NCBI GenBank assembly: GCA_033442325.1
Contig: JAWQFM010000022.1
Location: forward strand, 542,791 to 587,289
From: Salpingoeca rosetta
Taxonomy: Eukaryota > Protista > Choanoflagellata
Reading direction: 5' to 3'
DNA: 44,499 nucleotides
Shown: piece by piece, positions 5,757 through 19,562 of the stretch
How positions within the stretch are numbered: the stretch's first letter is position 1
Layout of the letters: every line of letters begins with the position of its first letter
The notes under the pieces: generated by a model
What the model was told of the DNA's origin: nothing
Seen by the model: only the letters and a program-made list of their open reading frames with translations
The model's database searches: none
Made by a program: the position numbers and the translations under genes

Positions 5757-5984
5757 ATGAGAAGGGCTCAACCCACCAACACAGCGGCAGCGACGCTGAT
5801 GTTGTCGTTGCTCACGTTCATTGCAATGTTCTCGACCACTTCCTGCGCCACGCCAGCCACGACGTACCGTGTTGGCTGCACAGTGACTCCCATCAACCCA
5901 TGTGCGTGCGTGCGTGCGTGTGTGTGTGTGTGTGTGTGTACGTGTGTGTGTGTACGTGTGTGTGTGTGTGTGCGTGTGTGTGTA

Positions 5985-6067
<83 letters not shown>

Positions 6068-6813
6068 AATGGAATTGGTCACCCCTCAAATACCGAAGCT
6101 AATCATTCTGTTTTGACCCTCCTACTTCAATGGTTGCCACTACCTTCCTGTTCATAGGGCTGTGCAATGCCTTGGAGGACATCTTTGAGCGGTACGCACC
6201 ATGGGACGTCACGTTCCAGTACATGACGGAAGTGGACATCCTCGACAATGCCGCCAGCCTGGACTTTGCCCTTGTCGACCCAAAGACCGTCTCCTGCCTT
6301 GACGTGGAGCACGCTGTTGCTCCGTTGGCCACCCTGGGTCTTCCAAACATCTTCGGTACGTACGTCACAAGGCGTGTGTTTTGTGTGTGTGTGTGTTGTG
6401 TGTGTGTGTGTGTTCTTTGTGTGTGTGTGTGTGTATGTGCATGTGTTCTTTGTGTATTTGTGTGTGTGTGTGTGCTGTGCATGCATGTGCTTCGCCCAGC
6501 GAGCCTACCGCTACAACATGTGCCTTGCTTCCTCGTCCCACCATGTTCGCCAACCATTATTGACTCGCTTGGTCGTTTTCACAATGTTGTGCACGCAGTG
6601 GAGACGCGCAAGGACCACAACGACTACCTGTACCAGACTGGTGGCGTCATCTTTGCGCTGGCCAGCTCCGAGCTGAGGGTGCTCACAGATGTGAAGGACA
6701 AGATTGTCGCTGCCACCACGACCACGGACTTTGCAAGCACACTGGCCCCTTTTGCAGAGTACAAAACCGAGACGGGCAACGAGCTTGTCATGGACGCAGC
6801 AATGGTACGATTG

Positions 6814-6846
<33 letters not shown>

Positions 6847-6929
6847 TGTGAGTGAGTGGGTGTGCGTCTGCGTCGATGTGTGCGTGTGTGTGTGTATGTG
6901 CGTGTGTCTGCGTGTTTGTGTCTGCGTTG

Positions 6930-6963
<34 letters not shown>

Positions 6964-7830
6964 TGAACAAGGTGTGGTTGTACATTGTGGTCAAGCATAT
7001 CATCACTTCTTGCACCATCCCTTGCGTCACCCAACCTGTCCAAGCAGCTGGGTGTCCACACACACATATGCTCACACACATATATGCTCACGCACACATT
7101 GCATTGTGTGTGCGGCCTTTTCACAGGTGCAGTATCTGGGGTCGCCACAGCGCGTGCTTGAAGCGGTGCTTGCTGGTGTTGCACACGTGGGCATGGTGCA
7201 GACGGGGTTCCTTGAGCGTGCAGTGGCACGTGGGGACCTGGCTTGGGCGCAAGTCAGTGTGCTGTCACAGAACCTCGTGGTTGAGGATGACCTTCGCTTC
7301 CCGTATGTCAGCTCAACGCTCGTGTATCCAGACTGGTCACTGATCGCCTTTGACTCTGCAGATGCTGATGTAAGGGCACATGCATTTGCCGTGCGTGTGT
7401 GTGCATGTGTGTGTGTGTGCATATGTGGGTGCTTGAACTTGCGCTTGTACTTGTACTTGTACTTGCGGGTGCTTGTACTTGTACTTGTGTGTGTGTGCAT
7501 TTGTGTTGTTGTGCCCAAAGTCACGTGCAATCCAGCTTCGCAGCACCACGGACATCGTTAATTCGCCAATGCCTCAGCCCAATCAATCACACACCGTGTA
7601 CACATATCGATATACTCACGTGTAACCATGTCCTTTCAACATCCTGCACCCTCATTCACTAGGACCGAGAAACCATGATGAACTTTGTGTTTAGCACCAA
7701 CACCACACTGGACATCCACTTCACCACATCCCGCAGCTACGCCACCGTGGGCGACATCTTGGTGCGTACATTCGGTCGTGGTTGTGCACACACGCGCGCA
7801 CACAGCACGCTTGTATGCACAAACACACAC

Positions 7831-7910
<80 letters not shown>

Positions 7911-10900
7911 GCGCATGAATGTAACATGTTGCGCGCCTGTCGAGCAGCACACCCAATGCGTTGCTGCTGTTGACAAGCCTTCACCTCATCGCTGTGCCCC
8001 TTTTTGTGCCGTTCACGCACACACGCGCACGCACACTCACACTCACTCTGCCTCTCTCTCTCTCTCTCTGTACCTGTTTGCGTCTCTCCTTGTCTTTGCT
8101 TTGTTTACCAACTGTAGGAAACATACGGGGTGATTGTGCGCGACCTTGATCAGCCGCTGCTGGCACAGTGCCCACGATCGGCATCCCACTTTGTACACCA
8201 TGGTGACAGCACGGTTTCCGCAACTCCTGATCACGTTCGCCTCAGTGTTAACCGCACAGGCCTCACGGACGAGGAGATAGAGAAACAGCTTGAAACGATT
8301 ATCAACTGCCCATCTGACACCTATCCATTACATTACCTCATTATCTTCGAGCTGTGCGATGGAATGGACTGCCCCGAGCATTCCCTATGCATCTGTCGTC
8401 CCTGTCAACACGCAACACCAGTTCAAGTACGAGCGTTTGCACAAGTGCTATGCGTGTTCTCATGCATGTTGGTGTATTTGGCCATGAGCGTACAAGACGT
8501 GTCTACAATTGAAAAGCAAGGTATCCATCAAGCGTTTTCGATGACTAACATGAAACTCCCTGTATCCTCACTGCCACCACCACGACTACCGCCATCGTCA
8601 TGATAATCAGATCCACCACACAGAGGAGTTCTTCACGCAGCACACGCTGGAGACGAACCACGCGCTCCTGGCCGACATTCTCGGTGTCTCATGTGGGCGT
8701 ATGCGCACTTGCAGCCAGGACCAGCAACCAAACACACAGTACTTTCTGGTTGAAGATCACCTCTACGACGTGCGCGATAACCAGGATACGGTGTTCTTTC
8801 ACGTGAACGTCAAGTCCTTGGAAGGTGACGGCTTTTCGTTTTCCACAGAAGGGGTGCCTGTGCCTGGCCACCCGTACCTTGCCACCGTCAACATTTCTGG
8901 CCTCCACTTTGGAACGCTCACAGTTGAGGTGCGCACACATTTCGTTTGAGAATCGTGCGTGTTTGTTTTTGTGTGTGTGTGTGTGTGCGTGTGTGTGTAT
9001 GTGTGTGTATGTGTGTGTGTGTGTGTGCGTGCGTGCATGTGTGTGTGTGTGCGTGTGCGTGCGTGTGCGTGCGTGCGTGTGTGTGTGTGTGAGGGTATGC
9101 TCTTGTGTGCCGCTGTGAGAACCATAACGTTTCTCTTGTTTGTGACACTGGCTCATGCAATGCACATGCCGCTGCTCTCTCCCACACCCTCCCTCACCCC
9201 CCATACACACATATCAGGTGTTTCTCGCAGACCGCCTGACATCTGAGGAGGAGTGGGAGCCGATTACCGCCAGCCCCTTCCTTGTGGATGTGCTGCCACG
9301 TGACTGTCCCAAAGGCGAGGTCCCAACCCAAGACAATATGTGCGTGTGTCCTGCCGGCGCACTTCGCATTGGTGGCAAGTGCATGGACCCAGCAGAGTCG
9401 ACACCTCTCTTCGTCGCACTGACGGTGTTCGTCATCGGTGTTATCGGGTACATCGTGTTTATCGTTATGCGCAAGCGTGCGGATGCGCTGTGGCAGATCG
9501 ACAGCGAGGACATTGTTGTGAGCGATCCTCCAGAGGTGCTGGGGATGGGCGCATTTGGTGTAGTGATCAAGGGGGAGCTGAACGGCACCGGCATCGCCAT
9601 CAAGCGTGTCATGCCCAAACCACCGTCTCGATCAAAGGCGGACAAGGCGACAACATCCCAGACACGTTCCACCAAAAGCTCTCCGCGGAGCGTTTCAAGA
9701 GCTGGCGATCGCTTTATGCTGAGCACAACCAATTTCGAACAGCGGGCCGCCAGTCGTGGTGACACTCTCGTGAGCGCCATGAGCACGCACAACAGCACCA
9801 TGAACACGGCTACCAAGAGCAAACGTGGACGATCCCTGCAGGCAGCGAGGTAACTCCGAGTGGACACATGTTCCTGTTATTTCATGAAGACGCGTCCCTT
9901 GATCTCGCACACGCACACACTCTCACCCCTAGCAAACGCACGGATCACGACACCAACGTAACAGGGCCGAGTTCCTTGCGGAAATGAGGCTGTTATCGCG
10001 CCTGCGCCATCCGTGCGTCGCCACCATGCTCGGTGCAACTCTGACGAAGTCAGGCGAAGTGCTCCTCGTCATGGAGTACCTCGAGCACGGGTAGGTGTCT
10101 GCGTGTACATAAATATACATAGATGTGTGTGCGTGTGTGTGTGTGTGTGTCGCATGCTGCTTGAGAATGCGTGCAAGCAACCTGGCAGAGCCCTTCTCAT
10201 CGCTCACAAAACGCTGTCACCATCTGTAACTGCTCAAACGCTGCACAATACAACAACAGTTCGCTGTACGACTTTTTGCGCAACGACAAGCTGCCGACGC
10301 CAGACATGTTCCTGCTGCCCATTGTCAAGGACATTGTGTCTGGCATGCGCTACATCCACAACCTCAAGCCGCCGGTTGTGCACGGCGACCTGAAGGCAAA
10401 GAACGTGCTTGTGGATGGCAACTTCAAGGCCAAGATTGCCGACTTTGGGCTCTCACAGAAGCGTCGCTTTGGCTGTGGCACACCATACTGGATGGCGCCA
10501 GGTGTGTGTGTGTGTGTGTGTGGTGTATGCGTGTGTGCATATGTGCATGTACATGCGTGTTTGCACGTGTGTGTGTATGTGTGTGTGTGTGTGTGTGTGT
10601 GTTGCACAGCTGCGTCCTTTCCCCTACCTCAACACATACATAACCTTCCAACCACTGCCACTCACAATCACTGCCACTCACAACCACCACCACCACAACC
10701 ACCCATTGCCACCAATCATTCAAATCATGCAGAGGTGCTGCGCGGAGGAGAGGTGACGCGGGAGGCGGACGTGTACAGCTTCGCCATCACCGTGTACGAG
10801 ATCTACAGCCGACAGGACCCGTTCCCAGAGGAGAACGTGGCGGAGGTGCTGCAGCAGATTGCCGCACGCCAGGTGCCGGCAAAGCGACCCGACATCCCAG

Positions 10901-12327
10901 ACTCGTGCCCCGTCATGCTGGCTGAGCTTGCGCGGCGGTGCTGGTCCGAGGAGCCCAAGTTCCGGCCAACGTTCGACCAGGTGGACGCGCAGCTGGGCGA
11001 GCTCAACATCAGCAAGGTGGGCGCAAGCCTCATCCAGCAGAAGCAGGACGCGCTGAAGAAGGCCACGGTGCTCAACGACGTGTTCCCGCCACACATTGCC
11101 AAGATGCTGGAGGAGGGCAAGAAGGTGCACCCGGAGCACAAGGACGACGTGACCATCTTCTTCTCCGACATTGTGGGCTTCACCAACATCAGCGCGCAGC
11201 TGACGCCGGCGGCGGTGTCGGACATGCTGGACCGACTGTACTCTGCCTTTGACGAGCTGACGGAGAAGCACGGCGTGTTCAAGGTGGAGACCATTGGCGA
11301 CGCGTACATGGCGGCAACAAACCTTGTTGAGCCGCAGCACGACCACGCGCTCCGCATTGCGCAGTTTGCGGAGGACGCCATCAAGGCGGCGCAGTCGACG
11401 TTCATTGACATGGAGCGGCCGGAGCTCGGGTGCGTGAACATCCGCGTTGGGTTCCACTGCGGCCCTGTTGTGGCCAACGTTGTTGGGCGGCGCAACCCGC
11501 GGTACTGCCTGTTTGGGGACACGGTGAACACGGCGTCGCGCATGGAGAGCTCGAGCGAGCGCAACAAGATCCACGTGTCGACGTCTGCGGGGGACCGCGT
11601 GCGGAGCCAGGCGCCATGGGTGAAGCTTGAGTCGCGCGGGGTGCAGAACATCAAGGGCAAGGGCGAGATGCTGACATACTGGCTGGTGAGCACGAAGCGG
11701 GAGAAGAAGAAGGAGGGCGGGCAGCGGGTGATGATTGCCTCCGAAGAGGCAGAGGTCATCGAGATGCCGAACGAGGACACCAGCGACAACGAGAACGGTG
11801 GCGCCGAGGATGAGGGTGATGCAAGCTCGAAAGCGAGTGAGACTTTGCACAACAGCACGGCGGACCATGCTGCTGACACCACCTCCAATGTAGTCAGTGC
11901 TAGCCAAGGTGCTTCTGTCGTGCCTGCGCGTGTGTCGGCGTCGGCCCAGCACCGCTCAATACGCTTGAGTGACTCAGGCTTGCCGCCTTCCCACCGTGAG
12001 TCCTCAGACAAAGGTTCTTCCTCCTCTTTCGATGGTGACAGTGTTCGTCTGTACGACGCTCACGCTCGCGACAGCATCTCCGTCATGCATGGTGACGTCA
12101 GCGGACCTGGGGTGTCCTCGGATGCGAAGCACGCGCGGATTTCTCATGTCTCGTTGAGTGAGTGTACATGGCTTCATGCAGACCCAGCAGACAAGTCTGC
12201 GCCACAGGCCCACAACCGACCATCTTCACCTCGTTGTCTTGAGTCCAAGCAAGCCGTTTCACAACAAGAAGACGGCCGTGCGCCTTCCACTGTGTTGCGT
12301 GACAATGGCCCAGAAAGCGTTGTTTGA
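5757..12327 (+). CDS. Receptor kinase-guanylate cyclase, copy 1 (signal peptide, periplasmic-binding-protein-like sensor, Cys-rich/Ig-like stalk, TM, protein kinase, class III guanylate cyclase)
   Basis: Exons 5757-5901, 6158-6355, 6599-6804, 7127-7369, 7663-7761, 8118-8426, 8611-8928, 9218-9849, 9965-10090, 10260-10501, 10733-12327 splice in frame. Kinase motifs: [30 protein letters not shown]. Cyclase motifs: [37 protein letters not shown] (the Glu/Cys pair specifies GTP). TM segment [20 protein letters not shown]. Confidence 0.88.
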
Positions 12328-15252
12328 GTACTGCACTGTAACCATGTGAATCGACTGGCAGCTACGTGTGTGTGTGTGTGTGTGTGTGTGTCCCCTTGCG
12401 CGCTCACCTATGCTTCAACGCCACCTTTCTTTTTCTTTGTTGCTCCTGTTGTTCATGCCATGTTTGCCCGTTTGTCTTACTGTGGAACGTTGTTGTGCTG
12501 TCAGTTTTCATATCGTGCTTCGATCGACTGCACACCCTTGCTCTTTTGTATTCTTCACATGGGATTATATGTGGTTTGTTCCTTGTCGCGCTGTGGTCTT
12601 GCGTCCCAGCATGTCCTTCGGTTGTTCAACACACGATGCTTCAATACATACACCAGCATTGTGCCTTCATTGGACAACAGTGTGTGCATTATTTTGTGTG
12701 TTTCGTTGAGACGTGTGGGTGGAGAGTTGTAGGCAAGACCATCAAGTTCATTCGACTCGAACTTCGCGAAGATACGTTTCTTTGTGTCGAGTTCGGAACC
12801 AGGAAGGATTGCCTGTTCGGAGGAGCATATGCAAACGGAGATCAACCTTCAACAACGCGCTTGAGCGGTTCTGCTTTTCTCTTCGTTGTGTGACTTGACG
12901 TGTGTGACATCAGCCGTAGCTCGACCCTTTATCCTTTACCAACCTGCATTCGCGCGGTCCTCAACGACTGAGGCAAGCCATCGCACTGTAACGAACCTAC
13001 TTACGTGTTCCACTGTCACTTTACAGTCCTCTTTTTCCTCTCTCGGTGACGTCATCGAACCCAAAATCCACCTGCACTGACTGTCACTACGAGCGAAAAA
13101 GAAGCACAAACCTACCAAATTGCGGCTTTGTGTCAAGCAAAACAACGCAGTTGACCTGTGATCGAGGTGTGCGTTGCGGTAGAAGCGGCAGGAGATAGAC
13201 GAGAACCTCAGCTCACACGTCATTTCATCAGAGTCCAAAGCGGTTTCACGCACGCGAGCCGTACCACATCAGGCCATGATCTTGTTGGGAGTGTTGCTGC
13301 TTGCGGTGACACCCACGGTGAATGCTTACCGCATTGGGTGTGCAGCGACCCCTGTTCAACCGCGTAAGTTCTTGTTTTCTGCAACCTTCTTGCCTTGAAG
13401 CGTTCCTGCGCGTATTGGCATAGATATTGTGTTCATGTGTGTTTGGCGCCAACTGAACATTTGCAGGCATATGCAATGCCTTGGAGGACATCTTTGAGCG
13501 GTACGCACCATGGGACGTCACGTTCCAGTACATGACGGAAGTGGACATCCTCGACAATGCCGCCAGCCTGGACTTTGCCCTTGTCGACCCAAAGACCGTC
13601 TCCTGCCTTGACGTGGAGCACGCTGTTGCTCCGTTGGCCACCCTGGGTCTTCCAAACATCTTCGGTACGTATATGTCACAAGGCGTGTGTGTATTGTGTG
13701 AGTGTGTGTGTGTGTCTTGTGTGTGTGTGTGTGTTCTTTGTGTGTGTGTGTGTGTGTGTGTATGTGCATGTGTTCTTTGTGTATTTGTGTGTGTGTGTGT
13801 GTGTGCTGTGCATGCATGTGCTTCGCCCAGCGAGCCTACCGCTACAACATGTGCCTTGCTTCCTCGTCCCACCATGTTCGCCAACCATTATTGACTCGCT
13901 TGGTCGTTTTCACAATGTTGTGCACGCAGTGGAGACGCGCAAGGACCACAACGACTACCTGTACCAGACTGGTGGCGTCATCTTTGCGCTGGCCAGCTCC
14001 GAGCTGAGGGTGCTCACAGATGTGAAGGACAAGATTGTCGCTGCCACCACGACCACGGACTTTGCAAGCACACTGGCCCCTTTTGCAGAGTACAAAACCG
14101 AGACGGGCAACGAGCTTGTCATGGACGCAGCAATGGTACGATTGTTGTGTGTGTGTGTGTGTGTGTGTATGTGCGTGTGAGTGAGTGGGTGTGCGTCTGC
14201 GTCGATGTGTGCGTGTGTGTGTGCGTGTGTGTGTGTATGTGCGTGTTTGTGTCTGCGTTGATGTGTGTGTGTGTGTGTGTGTGAGTGTTGATGTGTGTGT
14301 GTGTGTGTGTGTGTGTGTGGTGAACAAGGTGTGGTTGTACATTGTGGTCAAGCATATCATCACTTCTTGCACCATCCCTTGCGTCACCCAACCTGTCCAA
14401 GCAGCTGGGTGTCCACACACACATATGCTCACACACATATATGCTCACGCACACATTGCATTGTGTGTGCGGCCTTTTCACAGGTGCAGTATCTGGGGTC
14501 GCCACAGCGCGTGCTTGAAGCGGTGCTTGCTGGTGTTGCACACGTGGGCATGGTGCAGACGGGGTTCCTTGAGCGTGCAGTGGCACGTGGGGACCTGGCT
14601 TGGGCGCAAGTCAGTGTGCTGTCACAGAACCTCGTGGTTGAGGATGACCTTCGCTTCCCGTATGTCAGCTCAACGCTCGTGTATCCAGACTGGTCACTGA
14701 TCGCCTTTGACTCTGCAGATGCTGATGTAAGGGCACATGCANNNNNNNNNNNNNNNNNNNNNNNNNNNNNNNNNNNNNNNNNNNNNNNNNNNNNNNNNNN
14801 NNNNNNNNNNNNNNNNNNNNNNNNNNNNNNNNNNNNNNNNNCATATGTGGGTGCTTGAACTTGCGCTTGTACTTGTACTTGTACTTGCGGGTGCTTGTAC
14901 TTGTACTTGTGTGTGTGTGCATTTGTGTTGTTGTGCCCAAAGTCACGTGCAATCCAGCTTCGCAGCACCACGGACATCGTTAATTCGCCAATGCCTCAGC
15001 CCAATCAATCACACACCGTGTACACATATCGATATACTCACGTGTAACCATGTCCTTTCAACATCCTGCACCCTCATTCACTAGGACCGAGAAACCATGA
15101 TGAACTTTGTGTTTAGCACCAACACCACACTGGACATCCACTTCACCACATCCCGCAGCTACGCCACCGTGGGCGACATCTTGGTGCGTACATTCGGTCG
15201 TGGTTGTGCACACACGCGCGCACACAGCACGCTTGTATGCACAAACACACAC

Positions 15253-15324
<72 letters not shown>

Positions 15325-18300
15325 GCGCATGAATGTAACATGTTGCGCGCCTGTCGAGCAGCACACCCAATGCGTTGCTGCTGTTGACAAGCCTTCACCT
15401 CATCGCTGTGCCCCTTTTTGTGCCGTTCACGCACACACGCGCACGCACACTCACACTCACTCTGCCTCTCTCTCTCTCTCTGTACCTGTTTGCGTCTCTC
15501 CTTGTCTTTGCTTTGTTTACCAACTGTAGGAAACATACGGGGTGATTGTGCGCGACCTTGATCAGCCGCTGCTGGCACAGTGCCCACGATCGGCATCCCA
15601 CTTTGGGATCATGAATGAAGCAACTCAAGAGTGGACCACCGAACTCTCTATCGATGTGGGAAGCCTTACTCATGACGAAGCTGAGCTGCTGCTGTCAGAC
15701 CTCGTGATTTGCCCGGCGAACACATATGCGCTTCACTATCTCATCATCTTCGAACTATGTGACGAGTTTCATTGCCCTGAGGAAGCATTCTGCACTTGCA
15801 GTCCTTGCAAGCGTGCGAACCCAGTGCAGGTCGGTAAGCTATGTCATGTTCACGCCTTGCACGTGATAGACTTTGATGTTGTGTTTGAACTGGTGCCCAC
15901 TCCCTGTGTTTGTCGCCGTTCACATGATGTACTTTTCCCCTGCCAACACCGCCACCACTAGATCCACCACACAGAGGAGTTCTTCACGCAGCACACGCTG
16001 GAGACGAACCACGCGCTCCTGGCCGACATTCTCGGTGTCTCATGTGGGCGTATGCGCACTTGCAGCCAGGACCAGCAACCAAACACACAGTTCCTGCTGA
16101 TCGAGGACAAGGTGTTTGATGAACGGCACAACCAGGATACGGTGTTCTTTCACGTGAACGTCAAGTCCTTGGAAGGTGACGGCTTTTCGTTTTCCACAGA
16201 AGGGGTGCCTGTGCCTGGCCACCCGTACCTTGCCACCGTCAACATTTCTGGCCTCCACTTTGGAACGCTCACAGTTGAGGTGCGCACACATTTCGTTTGA
16301 GAATCGTGCGTGTTTGTTTTTGTGTGTGTGTGTGTGCGTGTGTGTGTGTATGTGTGTGTATGTGTGTGTGTGTGTGTGCGTGCGTGCATGTGTGTGTGTG
16401 TGTGTGCGTGTGCGTGCGTGTGCGTGCGTGCGTGTGTGTGTGTGTGAGGGTATGCTCTTGTGTGCCGCTGTGAGAACCATAACGTTTCTCTTGTTTGTGA
16501 CACTGGCTCATGCAATGCACATGCCGCTGCTCTCTCCCACACCCTCCCTCACCCCCCATACACACATATCAGGTGTTTCTCGCAGACCGCCTGACATCTG
16601 AGGAGGAGTGGGAGCCGATTACCGCCAGCCCCTTCCTTGTGGATGTGCTGCCACGTGACTGTCCCAAAGGCGAGGTCCCAACCCAAGACAATATGTGCGT
16701 GTGTCCTGCCGGCGCACTTCGCATTGGTGGCAAGTGCATGGATCCAGCAGAGTCGACACCTCTCTTTGTCTGCATCTCGCTGGTTGTGATAGGACTGGCA
16801 ATGTACGGCGTGGTCGCTGTCATGCGCAAGCGTGCGGATGCGCTGTGGCATATTGACAGCGAGGACATTGTTGTGAGCGACCCGCCCGACATGCTTGGCC
16901 GAGGAGCGTTTGGAGTTGTGATCAAGGGGGAGCTGAACGGCACCGGCATCGCCATCAAGCGGGCAATGCCAAGGCCATCCTCCGATGCGTTGGCGTCCAG
17001 CTCGAAGAACCAGAAGTCAGGCACTTCGGTGGCTTCGTTTGAAGTCAAAGGCAATTCCTCACAGGCTGGTGTTGCCACCACCGTCTTCAACCTGGGCTAC
17101 CACGCAAACGGCGGAGACTTGATTGAAAAGGCGTTGAAGCAAGATCACTCATCGTTGTTCGGATCCACACAGCGCGGGCGAACCACGAAGGACTACTCTG
17201 TGGCCAAGTACGTTGCACTTCACGTTTAAGCGGCCTGTATGTCCAAGATACACTTCATTCATGTCACCACCGCTCACGGCATATGCTTGTAATGGCCTTG
17301 TTGACACTGACGTACAGGGCCGAGTTCATGGCCGAGATTCGCCTGCTGTCGCGCCTGCGCCATCCGTGCGTCGCCACCATGCTTGGTGCCATCGTCACGA
17401 GATCCAAGGAGGTGCTTCTTGTCATGGAATACCTCGAGCACGGGTTAGCACGCGAGGTGTGGGTGGGTGGATGAGCAGATGGATCGGTGAACTTGGATCG
17501 CGCAAGTCTTCATTTGCGCCTGCGGTCGGACACCGCTGTCTCCTTTCACTCACATCCAACACATGCGCGCGCACATATTTATCCGCACACACACATACAC
17601 ACACCGCTCATAATTGCACGTACGTTCGAAGGTCACTGTATGACTTCCTGCGCAACGACAAGCTGCCGACGCCAGACATGTTCCTGCTGCCCATTGTCAA
17701 GGACATTGTGTCTGGCATGCGCTACATCCACAATCTCAAGCCACCGGTTGTGCACGGCGACCTGAAGGCAAAGAACGTGCTTGTGGACGGTAACTTCAAG
17801 GCCAAGATTGCTGATTTCGGGCTCTCGCAGAAGCGTCGCTTTGGCTGCGGCACACCATACTGGATGGCGCCAGGTGTGTGTGTGTGTGTGTGTGCATGTG
17901 CACACATGCGTGTTTGCACGTGTGTGTGTATGTGTGTGTATGTGTGTGTGTATGTGTGTGTGTTGCACAGCTGCGTCCTTTCCCCTACCTCAACACATAC
18001 ATAACCTTCCAACCACTGCCACTCACAATCACTGCCACTCACAACCACCACCACCACAACCACCCATTGCCACCAATCATTCAAATCATGCAGAGGTGCT
18101 GCGCGGAGGAGAGGTGACGCGGGAGGCGGACGTGTACAGCTTCGCCATCACCGTGTACGAGATCTACAGCCGACAGGACCCGTTCCCAGAGGAGAACGTG
18201 GCGGAGGTGCTGCAGCAGATTGCCGCACGCCAGGTGCCGGCAAAGCGACCCGACATCCCAGACTCGTGCCCCGTCATGCTGGCTGAGCTTGCGCGGCGGT

Positions 18301-19133
18301 GCTGGTCCGAGGAGCCCAAGTTCCGGCCAACGTTCGACCAGGTGGACGCGCAGCTGGGCGAGCTCAACATCAGCAAGGTGGGCGCAAGCCTCATCCAGCA
18401 GAAGCAGGACGCGCTGAAGAAGGCCACGGTGCTCAACGACGTGTTCCCGCCACACATTGCCAAGATGCTGGAGGAGGGCAAGAAGGTGCACCCGGAGCAC
18501 AAGGACGACGTGACCATCTTCTTCTCCGACATTGTGGGCTTCACCAACATCAGCGCGCAGCTGACGCCGGCGGCGGTGTCGGACATGCTGGACCGACTGT
18601 ACTCTGCCTTTGACGAGCTGACGGAGAAGCACGGCGTGTTCAAGGTGGAGACCATTGGCGACGCGTACATGGCGGCAACAAACCTTGTTGAGCCGCAGCA
18701 CGACCACGCGCTCCGCATTGCGCAGTTTGCGGAGGACGCCATCAAGGCGGCGCAGTCGACGTTCATTGACATGGAGCGGCCGGAGCTCGGGTGCGTGAAC
18801 ATCCGCGTTGGGTTCCACTGCGGCCCTGTTGTGGCCAACGTTGTTGGGCGGCGCAACCCGCGGTACTGCCTGTTTGGGGACACGGTGAACACGGCGTCGC
18901 GCATGGAGAGCTCGAGCGAGCGCAACAAGATCCACGTGTCGACGTCTGCGGGGGACCGCGTGCGGAGCCAGGCGCCATGGGTGAAGCTTGAGTCGCGCGG
19001 GGTGCAGAACATCAAGGGCAAGGGCGAGATGCTGACATACTGGCTGGTGAGCACGAAGCGGGAGAAGAAGAAGGAGGGCGGGCAGCGGGTGATGATTGCC
19101 TCCGAAGAGGCAGAGGTCATCGAGATGCCGAAT
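6163..19133 (+). repeat. Direct segmental duplication, period about 7.3 kb (6163-11772 vs 13472-19133), with a mosaic of near-identical and divergent blocks
   Basis: Direct comparison shows near-identical blocks: 6163-8193 with 13472-15605, 8779-9410 with 16130-16765, and 10733-11772 with 18094-19133. Differences are mainly in microsatellite length. Confidence 0.95.
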
Positions 19134-19562
19134 GAGAGCAAACATCGCGGTGATGGTGACAAGCGCTCAGCTGCCTCTGCTGACAAGCCCACCCTCCCGA
19201 GACCCCCGAGCCAGAGCAGCTCGCTGCGAATTGCCTCGCTGGTTTCCTCGAGAGTGTCGCCAACGGGCTCTGATAAGCCATCTCCGAGTCGCGGAAGCAG
19301 CCTCAAATCCATGTCACGCAAACTCCCGTCGTCTGGTCCCTCACAGTTGTCACTGAAGGACTCTCCATGGCTTGCAAACCCCGATTCGAGTGAGGCCAAC
19401 GTCCGACGTCCTCGACGCAACCGAAGTTCCAGCCCACCGTCCCCATCCTTCCAGCGCATGGACCGCCGGGCCACTGCTACTACTGTTCATGTTGAAGACG
19501 ATGGCCATCATCCCCAGGCAACGTCCTTCCAAGCCTGGGCAGACTCCTCTGTGGACATTTGA
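13276..19562 (+). CDS. Receptor kinase-guanylate cyclase, copy 2 (tandem paralogue; one intron contains an assembly gap)
   Basis: Exons approximately 13276-13363, 13467-13664, 13930-14135, 14484-14726, 15085-15183, 15530-15829, 15962-16279, 16573-17207, 17318-17443, 17632-17873, 18094-19562. Intron positions and motifs match copy 1. Signal peptide [17 protein letters not shown]; [22 protein letters not shown]. Confidence 0.85.
14742..14841. other. Assembly gap (100 N)
   Basis: Run of exactly 100 N inside an intron of receptor copy 2. Confidence 0.99.

What the first reader, a model, noticed from the sequence alone, without database searches (positions are those of the whole stretch)
5757..19562. 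Tandem receptors fusing a bacterial-type solute-binding sensor to a kinase and a guanylate cyclase
Seen: both genes encode signal peptide, sensor, Cys-rich/Ig-like stalk, TM, kinase and GC. The sensor ([25 protein letters not shown]...[21 protein letters not shown]...[18 protein letters not shown]) has the pattern of type-II periplasmic binding proteins of the phosphate/phosphonate-binding family, as in TtrS-like bacterial sensor kinases (established pattern, recognised by eye). Animal receptor GCs use a different, ANF-receptor ectodomain. Inference: a small-molecule or anion chemosensor that outputs both phosphorylation and cGMP, possibly with a horizontally acquired sensor. I recall similar architectures in diatom predicted proteomes, which needs checking.
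Basis: partly seen in the sequence, partly recalled or inferred. Interest (0 to 1): 0.75.

Follow-up and report, generated by a model that had tools for sequence, protein, structure and literature searches.

The report
Choanoflagellate receptor kinase–guanylate cyclase pair
Two neighbouring genes of the choanoflagellate Salpingoeca rosetta each encode a cell-surface receptor that joins a bacterial-type small-molecule binding domain to a protein kinase and a cGMP-making enzyme; the design is real but belongs to a large, already catalogued yet unstudied protist family.

Summary
The genome is Salpingoeca rosetta. Two tandem + strand genes of 11 exons each (5757-12327, about 1370 aa; 13276-19562, about 1307 aa) close in frame with GT-AG introns. 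Each encodes a signal peptide, a PhnD-type type II binding domain, a Cys-rich and Ig-like stalk, one membrane span, a TKL kinase with every catalytic motif, and a class III cyclase with the guanylate-type Glu/Cys pair.

The assembly gap at 14742-14841 starts 15 nt after the exon 4 donor of gene 2, so it lies in an intron.

The sensor assignment rests on collinear exon matches to Pfam PF12974 and to a family profile (exon 4: 39 bits, E 1.7e-11). A relative's ectodomain folds at pLDDT 96 and matches PtxB, HtxB, ArrX, AioX and PhnD. Exon 4 is also 33% identical to a bacterial fragment that its source names TtrS.

The design is not unique. I found no paper describing it.

Ligand, kinase activity and horizontal transfer remain untested. 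The joined spliced protein was neither searched nor folded. No other window's notes describe this sensor fusion.

The parts
5757..5901 (+). Gene 1 exon 1: start codon, signal peptide (MRRAQPTN + hydrophobic [16 protein letters not shown]) and the first strand of the binding domain (YRVGCTVTP)
   Evidence: Sequence read. Donor CCCAT|GTGCGT. Same intron phase as gene 2.
6158..6355 (+). Gene 1 exon 2: binding domain, first helix and strands (LCNALEDIF...[10 protein letters not shown]...ATLGLPNIF)
   Evidence: Family profile hit at 6247-6339, 11 bits. 52% identical to P0121 residues 45-109. Junction letters.
6599..6804 (+). Gene 1 exon 3: binding domain, hinge and second lobe ([13 protein letters not shown]...[14 protein letters not shown])
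   Evidence: PF12974 profile 84-124. Family profile 24 bits, E 7e-7. Acceptor CGCAG|TG read.
7127..7369 (+). Gene 1 exon 4: binding domain, second lobe returning to the first ([21 protein letters not shown]...[18 protein letters not shown])
   Evidence: PF12974 24.3 bits, E 2.3e-5. Family profile 39.2 bits, E 1.7e-11. 33% identical to the TtrS-named fragment P0230. Donor GAT|GTAAGG.
7663..7761 (+). Gene 1 exon 5: last helices of the binding domain ([12 protein letters not shown]...ATVGDIL)
   Evidence: Collinear with P0121 residues 254-292 by eye. Junctions.
8118..8426 (+). Gene 1 exon 6: Cys-rich stalk cassette (…CPSDTY…[17 protein letters not shown]). Diverged from gene 2.
   Evidence: Family profile hit on the C.C.PC motif at 8355-8444.
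8611..8928 (+). Gene 1 exon 7: beta-rich stalk domain (most of the Ig-like fold)
   Evidence: 38-44% identical to P0121 and P0005. The homologous region of relative L001 folds as a filamin-type Ig domain.
9218..9849 (+). Gene 1 exon 8: end of the Ig-like domain ([13 protein letters not shown]), Cys knot, membrane span ([20 protein letters not shown] then MRKR), kinase Gly loop (GMGAFGVV), Lys (AIK) and a Ser/Thr-rich insert
   Evidence: Sequence. 55% identical to P0121 and P0005.
9965..10090 (+). Gene 1 exon 9: kinase helix C ([10 protein letters not shown]) to the hinge (LVMEYLEHG)
   Evidence: PF07714 28.9 bits.
10260..10501 (+). Gene 1 exon 10: kinase catalytic loop [11 protein letters not shown], and activation segment up to WMAP
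   Evidence: Best solved matches are CTR1 and RIPK2/3; the NPR1 kinase-like domain scores 4e-9.
10733..12327 (+). Gene 1 exon 11: kinase C-lobe, about 47-aa linker helix, class III cyclase domain with Glu ([10 protein letters not shown]) and Cys ([10 protein letters not shown]), acidic/Ser-rich tail, stop
   Evidence: PF00211 188.8 bits. ANP receptor 1, E 3e-58, aligned across C-lobe, linker and cyclase.
13276..13363 (+). Gene 2 exon 1: start codon, signal peptide [17 protein letters not shown], first strand YRIGCAATP
   Evidence: Donor CCGC|GTAAGT.
13467..14726 (+). Gene 2 exons 2-4 with their introns (exons 13467-13664, 13930-14135, 14484-14726): binding domain. From gene 1 position 6163 the exon letters are identical to gene 1; only the first five bases of exon 2 differ.
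   Evidence: differences otherwise only in microsatellite lengths inside introns. Profile hits.
14742..14841 (.). Assembly gap inside intron 4 of gene 2
   Evidence: It starts 15 nt after the donor and replaces 35 nt of TG repeat in gene 1.
15085..15183 (+). Gene 2 exon 5: end of the binding domain, identical to gene 1
15530..15829 (+). Gene 2 exon 6: Cys-rich stalk cassette, diverged from gene 1. An alternative donor lies at 15833|15834.
15962..16279 (+). Gene 2 exon 7: beta-rich stalk domain
16573..17207 (+). Gene 2 exon 8: end of the Ig-like domain, membrane span ([20 protein letters not shown] then MRKR), kinase N-lobe, diverged insert
17318..17443 (+). Gene 2 exon 9: kinase helix C to the hinge
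17632..17873 (+). Gene 2 exon 10: kinase catalytic loop and DFG
18094..19562 (+). Gene 2 exon 11: kinase C-lobe, linker, cyclase domain, diverged tail, stop
   Evidence: (192.6 bits).

Best explanation
These are two tandem paralogues of a Salpingoeca rosetta family of single-pass receptor guanylate cyclases.

Proposed order of events, outside to inside:
1. An N-terminal signal peptide puts a two-lobed PhnD-type (type II) binding domain outside the cell. It probably closes on a small, likely anionic, solute.
2. A Cys-rich segment and a filamin-type Ig domain form a stalk.
3. One helix crosses the membrane.
4. Inside, a TKL-type kinase domain with all catalytic motifs is joined by a short helical linker to one class III cyclase domain.
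5. The cyclase domain carries every catalytic residue in one chain, so the receptor should work as a homodimer, as animal GC-A does, and make cGMP when ligand binding re-orients the two chains.
6. The kinase either only regulates the cyclase, as the animal kinase-like domain does, or also phosphorylates itself (the Ser/Thr-rich insert) or other substrates.

The two copies share an essentially identical sensor: exons 2-5 differ only in the first five bases of exon 2. They differ in signal peptide, stalk cassette, membrane span, kinase insert and tail. They should therefore see the same ligand but differ in regulation, partners or location.

Shown here: the gene structure, the domain identities, and the catalytic and specificity residues. 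Inferred: ligand binding, dimer mechanism, cGMP output and kinase activity.
For: - Gene models close in frame with GT-AG introns.
- Pfam on exons finds PF12974, PF07714 and PF00211.
- A profile built from 41 ectodomains of the family hits exons 2, 3 and 4 in order, at 11, 24 and 39 bits, in both genes.
- Paralogue P0121 (XP_004991666.1), whose sensor exons are 47-52% identical to the window's, scores 47.8 bits on PF12974, plus kinase and cyclase. Its residues 40-300 sit nearest bacterial PF12974 clusters in the ESM Atlas, score 0.95.
- The ectodomain of a full-length relative folds at pLDDT 96.2. Its best solved matches are XAC2383, PtxB, ArrX, HtxB, AioX and PhnD, E 1e-16 to 1e-12.
- The stalk of that relative contains a filamin-type Ig fold.
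- Exon 11 aligns to ANP receptor 1 at E 3e-58. The motifs [18 protein letters not shown] and [17 protein letters not shown] are identical or near-identical, and they include the guanylate-type Glu and Cys.
- The catalytic-loop exon best matches active TKL kinases and keeps HGD, K, N and DFG.
- Single-ORF transcript-derived relatives have the same order of domains: Choanoeca perplexa P0050 and the cryptophyte-like contig L001.
Against: - No expression or splice data for these two genes were available, and the word searches did not return their own annotated proteins.
- Pfam on exon 4 alone is just below the gathering score (24.3 against 27 bits).
- The fold was predicted for a relative that is about 30% identical in exon 4, not for the window's own spliced ectodomain.
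- Several positions that are nearly invariant in the wider family differ here: FGG to TGG, the SGLGSG loop to TTTDFAST, and DVGFVR to HVGMVQ. The ligand cannot be guessed, and binding could even be lost.
- Signal peptide and membrane span were judged by eye only.
- The identical blocks around an assembly gap could partly reflect assembly error.
Confidence: 0.85

Rival explanations
1. The kinase domain is only a regulatory module, as in animal receptor cyclases, and transfers no phosphate. cGMP would then be the single output.
For: The whole kinase-linker-cyclase unit is homologous to ANP receptor 1, whose kinase-like domain is a pseudokinase. The catalytic loop reads HGD rather than HRD.
Against: The Gly loop GMGAFG, the AIK lysine, the helix C Glu, the catalytic Asp, Lys and Asn (HGDLKAKN), DFG and APE are all present. 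The catalytic-loop exon matches active kinases (CTR1, RIPK2/3; 6e-14 to 1e-12) better than it matches NPR1 (4e-9).
Confidence: 0.35
2. The sensor part and the kinase-cyclase part are separate genes, or one copy is a pseudogene, so the fusion is an artefact of reading exons together.
For: There are no transcript data for this locus. The two genes' own annotated proteins were not recovered. There is an assembly gap in gene 2.
Against: Both chains close in frame over 11 exons without a stop. The annotated S. rosetta paralogue P0121 and the transcript-derived relatives P0050 and L001 carry the same continuous architecture. The gap is intronic.
Confidence: 0.05
3. The near-perfect identity of exons 2-5 and their introns between the two copies is partly an assembly artefact, with collapsed or mis-joined repeat copies, rather than gene conversion.
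For: The identical block is interrupted by the only assembly gap. The introns are full of microsatellites, which confuse assemblers.
Against: Microsatellite lengths differ between the copies at seven places. Unique diverged cassettes flank the identical blocks in both copies. Cyclase exons at six further loci on three other contigs and elsewhere on C22 give nearly the same scores as the two here, which indicates genome-wide homogenisation or very recent spread.
Confidence: 0.12
4. The cyclase makes cAMP rather than cGMP.
For: Pfam PF00211 does not separate the two activities. Some sources name relatives 'class 3 adenylate cyclase'.
Against: The substrate-specifying Glu and Cys match those of ANP receptor 1 within identical motifs. 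Adenylate cyclases carry Lys and Asp at these positions (established knowledge of class III cyclases).
Confidence: 0.07

Closest known systems
Animal receptor guanylyl cyclases (GC-A/NPR1, GC-C)
   Same: Single-pass receptor with a juxtamembrane kinase-fold domain, a helical linker and one class III cyclase domain. It has the guanylate-type Glu/Cys and the full catalytic set for a homodimer. NPR1 is the best solved match (E 3e-58).
   Different: The ectodomain is a type II PhnD-like fold, not the type I ANF-receptor fold. A Cys-rich and Ig-like stalk is present. The kinase keeps all catalytic residues instead of being a pseudokinase. The linker is about 25 residues shorter. A Ser/Thr-rich insert lies in the kinase N-lobe.
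[quoted passage not shown]
   Same: A PF12974 binding domain is used as the extracytoplasmic sensor of a membrane signalling enzyme. Exon 4 is 33% identical to a fragment that its source names TtrS. These bacterial fragments are the nearest non-eukaryotic matches of a relative's ectodomain.
   Different: The output is a eukaryotic TKL kinase plus a cyclase, not HisKA/HATPase. The topology is a type I single-pass protein with a signal peptide and stalk.
Solute-binding proteins PtxB, HtxB and PhnD, and the sensor partners AioX and ArrX
   Same: The predicted fold of the family's ectodomain matches them (Foldseek probability 1.0, TM 0.6-0.8).
   Different: Those are free periplasmic proteins that hand their ligand or signal to a transporter or a kinase. 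Here the domain is fused to the signalling enzyme. Sequence identity is only 12-18%.
Protist kinase-cyclase receptors with other binding-protein ectodomains (diatoms such as Seminavis and Thalassiosira)
   Same: They share the same kinase-cyclase chassis at 50-57% identity. The fusion with PF12974 occurs in Ditylum, a Hanusia/Guillardia-like cryptophyte and Choanoeca perplexa.
   Different: Many diatom members carry PF01094, PF13416/PF01547, PF12849 or PF13458 ectodomains instead. The S. rosetta sensor is strongly diverged, about 26-30% identical in exon 4.
Trypanosome receptor-type adenylate cyclases and Venus kinase receptors
   Same: A flytrap-type binding fold is fused through one membrane span to a cyclase or a kinase (from reviews PMC6027212 and PMC4026697; not tested here).
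   Different: Those use type I folds and have a single enzymatic output.

Membership tests
Receptor guanylyl cyclases (animal type) | Signal peptide and one membrane span (type I topology) | tested here: met
   Read directly from the sequence. N-terminal hydrophobic leaders occur in both genes. There is a 20-23 residue hydrophobic stretch followed by MRKR. No predictor was run.
Receptor guanylyl cyclases (animal type) | Kinase-fold domain, linker, then one class III cyclase domain | tested here: met
   PF07714 and PF00211. A continuous alignment to ANP receptor 1, E 3e-58.
Receptor guanylyl cyclases (animal type) | Guanylate-type specificity residues (Glu, Cys) and the full metal and transition-state set in one chain | tested here: met
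   [18 protein letters not shown] and [17 protein letters not shown] align to the same motifs of ANP receptor 1.
Receptor guanylyl cyclases (animal type) | ANF-receptor (type I, PF01094) ectodomain | tested here: not met
   No PF01094 match. PF12974 is found instead.
Receptor guanylyl cyclases (animal type) | Kinase-like domain is a pseudokinase | tested here: not met
   All catalytic motifs are present. The best matches are active TKL kinases.
Receptor guanylyl cyclases (animal type) | Ligand-stimulated cGMP synthesis | not testable with these tools
   Needs an enzyme assay.
PhnD / phosphonate-binding type II binding proteins (PF12974) | Match to the family profile | tested here: met
   Pfam: exon 4 scores 24.3 bits (cut-off 27) and exon 3 scores 11 bits, in collinear order. 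The family-specific profile gives 11 + 24 + 39 bits on exons 2-4. Paralogue P0121 scores 47.8 bits.
PhnD / phosphonate-binding type II binding proteins (PF12974) | Two-lobed alpha/beta fold of PhnD topology | tested here: inconclusive
   Met for relative L001: pLDDT 96.2 with PtxB, HtxB, ArrX and PhnD as top matches. The window's own spliced ectodomain was not folded, because the joined model was left out.
PhnD / phosphonate-binding type II binding proteins (PF12974) | Conserved anion-binding residues and a known ligand | not tested
   By eye only: several positions nearly invariant in alignment A1 differ in the window.
TtrS-like sensor histidine kinases | PhnD-like sensor domain | tested here: met
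   Exon 4 against P0230: 33% identity over 72 residues, E 7e-8.
TtrS-like sensor histidine kinases | HisKA and HATPase_c transmitter | tested here: not met
   Pfam finds only a eukaryotic kinase and a cyclase.
TKL group protein kinases | Complete catalytic motifs and best similarity to TKL members | tested here: met
   Best matches are CTR1 and RIPK2/3. NCBI names the paralogues TKL/DICTY4.

The most novel reading that the evidence does not exclude
Choanoflagellates, the sister group of animals, keep an ancestral-like form of the receptor guanylyl cyclase. In it the kinase is still active and the sensor is a sensor-kinase-type PhnD flytrap that reads a dissolved oxyanion (a phosphorus, sulfur or arsenic species) directly. 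The family of twelve or more genes, with variable sensors on a homogenised kinase-cyclase chassis, would be a chemosensory repertoire steering cGMP-dependent behaviour or cell-type switching. It would also show how the animal pseudokinase domain arose.
Probability: 0.2. Interest if true: 0.7.

Novelty: new variant of a known kind. Interest (0 to 1): 0.5.

Why it matters
An older review held that single-pass receptor guanylyl cyclases arose after animals split from protists (PMC1435932).

[quoted passage not shown] It is combined there with bacterial-type solute sensors and with a kinase that looks active.

If the ligand and outputs were worked out, three things would follow:
- a direct link between seawater chemistry and cGMP signalling in a model choanoflagellate;
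- a natural comparison for how the animal kinase-like domain lost catalysis;
- modular sensor-to-cGMP parts for synthetic biology.

Against this, the architecture is already visible in public automatic annotation (UniRef F2UGJ5 and its relatives) and is common in marine protist data. The find is an uncharacterised family rather than something unseen.

Tried and rejected
- Word search with the 720-aa open frame of exon 11 and with the ectodomain of P0005. Neither returned the window's own annotated proteins, so no database protein for these two genes could be used.
- P0005 was first taken for the third paralogue on this contig. One search places it on contig C25 instead.
- My first exon 2/3 junction (6359/6504, with the anchor [12 protein letters not shown]) was wrong. 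The P0121 guide and the letters give 6355/6599.
- A homology-guided junction script and any phylogeny were lost when the script machine failed. The junctions were then checked by reading letters.
- Seven literature searches found no paper on this architecture. Biswas et al. 2009, on kinase-cyclase fusions, is cited in papers that are held but is not itself in the library, so I could not check it.
- The large representative search was not used, because the family scans and word searches had already settled the identity.
- The joined spliced protein was deliberately neither searched nor folded. All searches used single exons or open frames by reference, or database relatives.
- Pfam found no named domain in exons 1, 5, 6 or 7.

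Full report
**Source and layout**

The window is G000:C22:542791-587289 of a 55.4 Mb genome. The closest named proteins are from Salpingoeca rosetta, and paralogues in this genome match them at 100%. The organism is therefore this choanoflagellate.

The + strand between 5757 and 19562 holds two tandem genes whose introns are full of (TG)n and (CA)n runs.

**Gene models**

I built the models from three sources:
- stop-free frames;
- a first splice-site scan and tblastn of the annotated paralogues P0005 and P0121;
- reading of the junction letters.

Gene 1 exons: 5757-5901, 6158-6355, 6599-6804, 7127-7369, 7663-7761, 8118-8426, 8611-8928, 9218-9849, 9965-10090, 10260-10501, 10733-12327. The sum is 4113 nt, or 1370 codons plus the stop.

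Gene 2 exons: 13276-13363, 13467-13664, 13930-14135, 14484-14726, 15085-15183, 15530-15829, 15962-16279, 16573-17207, 17318-17443, 17632-17873, 18094-19562. The sum is 3924 nt, or 1307 codons plus the stop.

Both sums are multiples of three. All introns are GT-AG, and intron phases agree between the copies. One junction in gene 2 (exon 6/7) has an equally legal alternative, 15833 joined to 15975.

The joined spliced proteins were never handed to a search or a fold. Everything below rests on single exons or open frames given by reference, or on database relatives.

**The assembly gap**

Gene 2 is letter-for-letter identical to gene 1 up to 14741 and again from 14842.
- The N run begins 15 nt after the exon 4 donor (GCTGAT|GTAAGG).
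- It stands in for 35 nt of TG-rich intron in gene 1 (7385-7419).
- Exon 5 of gene 2 starts 243 nt after the gap.

Under the best model the gap lies in intron 4, so frame continuity across it does not arise. A weaker donor 27 nt further on would place the gap in coding sequence. I rate that unlikely, because the GTAAGG donor is much closer to consensus. The spacing to the next helix also matches P0121 and P0013 only with the earlier donor.

**The sensor**

- Pfam on single exons gives PF12974 for exon 3 (11 bits, profile 84-124) and exon 4 (24.3 bits, E 2.3e-5, profile 136-205). The order is collinear, but each exon alone is under the 27-bit cut-off.
- I made a family profile from 41 ectodomains related to the full-length relative L001 (alignment A1). 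It hits exon 2 (11 bits), exon 3 (24 bits, E 7e-7) and exon 4 (39 bits, E 1.7e-11), in order, in both genes. Nothing comparable appears elsewhere in the window.
- The annotated S. rosetta paralogue P0121 (XP_004991666.1, UniRef F2UGJ5) is 47-52% identical to the window's sensor exons. It scores 47.8 bits on PF12974 over profile 47-219.
- In the ESM Atlas, P0121 residues 40-300 lie next to bacterial PF12974 clusters at 0.95.
- For the fold I used an intronless metatranscriptome contig that encodes P0123, a protein of the same 90%-identity cluster and length as P0013 (L001). Its ectodomain, residues 45-330, folds at mean pLDDT 96.2. Its best solved matches are XAC2383, PtxB, ArrX, HtxB, AioX and PhnD, with E 1e-16 to 1e-12 and TM up to 0.83.

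This shows the fold for the family. For the window's own ectodomain it is an inference through homology.

**Nearest bacterial relatives of the sensor**

The L001 ectodomain matches many eukaryotic fragments. It then matches bacterial fragments carrying PF12974 with PAS domains, or named sensor histidine kinase TtrS, at 33-37% identity over nearly its full length.

The window's exon 4 aligns directly to that TtrS-named fragment at 33% over 72 residues, pairwise E 7e-8. That is at least as good as its match to the Choanoeca homologue, 26%.

TtrS and ThsS are documented to use a PhnD-like PF12974 sensor (PMC5408782).

**The stalk**

Exon 6 carries a Cys-rich motif (…C.C.PC) that the family profile also recognises.

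The stalk of L001 folds at pLDDT 85.6. Its C-terminal half matches filamin-type Ig domains: the TRIM3 filamin domain at E 3.6e-4, and filamin A and B repeats with TM 0.5-0.67 against the target. The window's [13 protein letters not shown] resembles the end of a filamin repeat; that last point is from memory and is only a lead.

Pfam sees no named domain in exons 6-7.

**Membrane span and kinase**

Each gene has one hydrophobic stretch followed by MRKR: [20 protein letters not shown] in gene 1 and [20 protein letters not shown] in gene 2.

The kinase has GMGAFG (GRGAFG in gene 2), AIK, a Glu in AEFLAEM (AEFMAEI in gene 2), [11 protein letters not shown] and WMAPE. Every residue needed for catalysis is present.
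- The catalytic-loop exon matches the active TKL kinases CTR1 and RIPK2/3 best (6e-14 to 1e-12).
- It matches the NPR1 kinase-like domain at 4e-9.
- A Ser/Thr-rich insert of about 75 residues lies between the lysine and helix C. It differs between the two copies.

An earlier first-stage note on another piece of this genome (s1-436590) also remarks on a receptor cyclase with an intact-looking kinase. I tested the point only on my own stretch.

**The cyclase**

PF00211 scores 188.8 bits. The best solved match of exon 11 is ANP receptor 1, E 3e-58. A single alignment runs from the kinase C-lobe through the linker to the end of the cyclase domain.

The motifs [18 protein letters not shown] and [17 protein letters not shown] are identical or nearly so. 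They contain both metal-binding Asp residues, the Asn and Arg, and the Glu and Cys that specify GTP. One chain therefore carries a full catalytic set, as in homodimeric animal receptor cyclases. The linker is about 25 residues shorter than in GC-A.

**The family in this genome**

- PF12974-type exons occur at 13 or more places, and cyclase exons at many more.
- Eight cyclase exons give nearly the same score, 190.5-192.6 bits. They lie on C14, C34, three places on C21 and three on C22, which include the two genes here and a third about 57-60 kb upstream of the window.
- More diverged pairs of sensor and cyclase exons lie on C36, C12, C15 and C33 (twice).
- Kinase-cyclase parts are about 90-97% identical among paralogues, while sensors are 43-52% identical.
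- Between the two genes here the pattern is extreme. Apart from the first five bases of exon 2, exons 2-5 and their introns are identical except for microsatellite lengths. Exon 1, exon 6, the kinase insert and the tail are diverged.

**The family outside this genome**

The same chassis is abundant in marine protist data (7994 of 8000 scored candidates at E <= 1e-10).
- With a PF12974 ectodomain it is found in Choanoeca perplexa (P0050, 82 bits), in a cryptophyte near Hanusia and Guillardia (P0013, 87 bits), and in the diatom Ditylum (P0064).
- Diatoms also carry it with PF01094, PF13416/PF01547, PF12849 or PF13458 ectodomains.
- No animal sequence was among the best 120.

**Horizontal origin of the sensor**

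A bacterial origin is plausible, because the nearest non-eukaryotic relatives are bacterial sensor kinases. The shared fusion across three eukaryotic groups means any transfer was old, or passed between eukaryotes. I could not build trees after the script machine was lost.

**Literature**

Seven searches found nothing on this architecture. A 2006 analysis held that animal receptor cyclases arose after the split from protists (PMC1435932). A 2009 paper on kinase-cyclase fusions is not in the library and may already have revised that view.

Public automatic annotation already names the paralogues 'TKL/DICTY4 protein kinase' and 'guanylate cyclase', with these Pfam domains.

**Verdict**

What is new is limited. 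This is a variant of the receptor guanylyl cyclase design with a type II, sensor-kinase-like flytrap and an apparently active kinase, in a family that is common but unstudied. Ligand, kinase activity, cGMP output and evolutionary route remain to be tested.

Noticed in passing
window 6163-8193 against 13472-15605: Exons 2-5 and their introns are identical in the two genes except for microsatellite lengths at seven places. Exon 1, exon 6 (8194-8608), the kinase insert (9607-9948) and the tails (after 11775) are diverged. The pattern suggests gene conversion in blocks.
   Followed up: partly
window introns, e.g. 5902-6157, 6356-6598, 6805-7126 (TG-rich) and 7762-8117 (CA- and CT-rich): Most introns begin with long (TG)n runs, while intron 5 carries (CA)n and (CT)n.
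   Followed up: no
G000:C25:607256-612864: Paralogue P0005 maps here at 96-100% identity. It has the sensor and the kinase, but contig C25 gives no PF00211 match, and the annotated protein skips most of the cyclase domain. It may be a natural cyclase-less, kinase-only receptor, or a broken copy.
   Followed up: partly
G000: C14:1258898, C34:348701, C21:513863/521623/535697, C22:486121/553918/561279: Eight cyclase exons on four contigs give almost the same Pfam score (190.5-192.6 bits). This suggests concerted evolution or a very recent spread of the kinase-cyclase chassis while the sensors diverge.
   Followed up: partly
G000:C27:763133-764414: Two sensor exons 96-97% identical to P0005 lie here without kinase or cyclase matches nearby in the lists. 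This may be a truncated duplicate.
   Followed up: no
proteins P0007, P0009, P0058, P0084, P0105: Diatom and metagenome relatives put at least five different bacterial-type binding-protein folds (PF01094, PF13416/PF01547, PF12849, PF13458, PF12974) on the same kinase-cyclase chassis. This looks like a modular receptor family.
   Followed up: no
window 9500-9849 and 16860-17207: A Ser/Thr-rich insert of about 75 residues lies between the kinase lysine and helix C. It is unrelated in sequence between the two copies but is present in distant relatives too. It could be a regulatory phosphorylation region.
   Followed up: no
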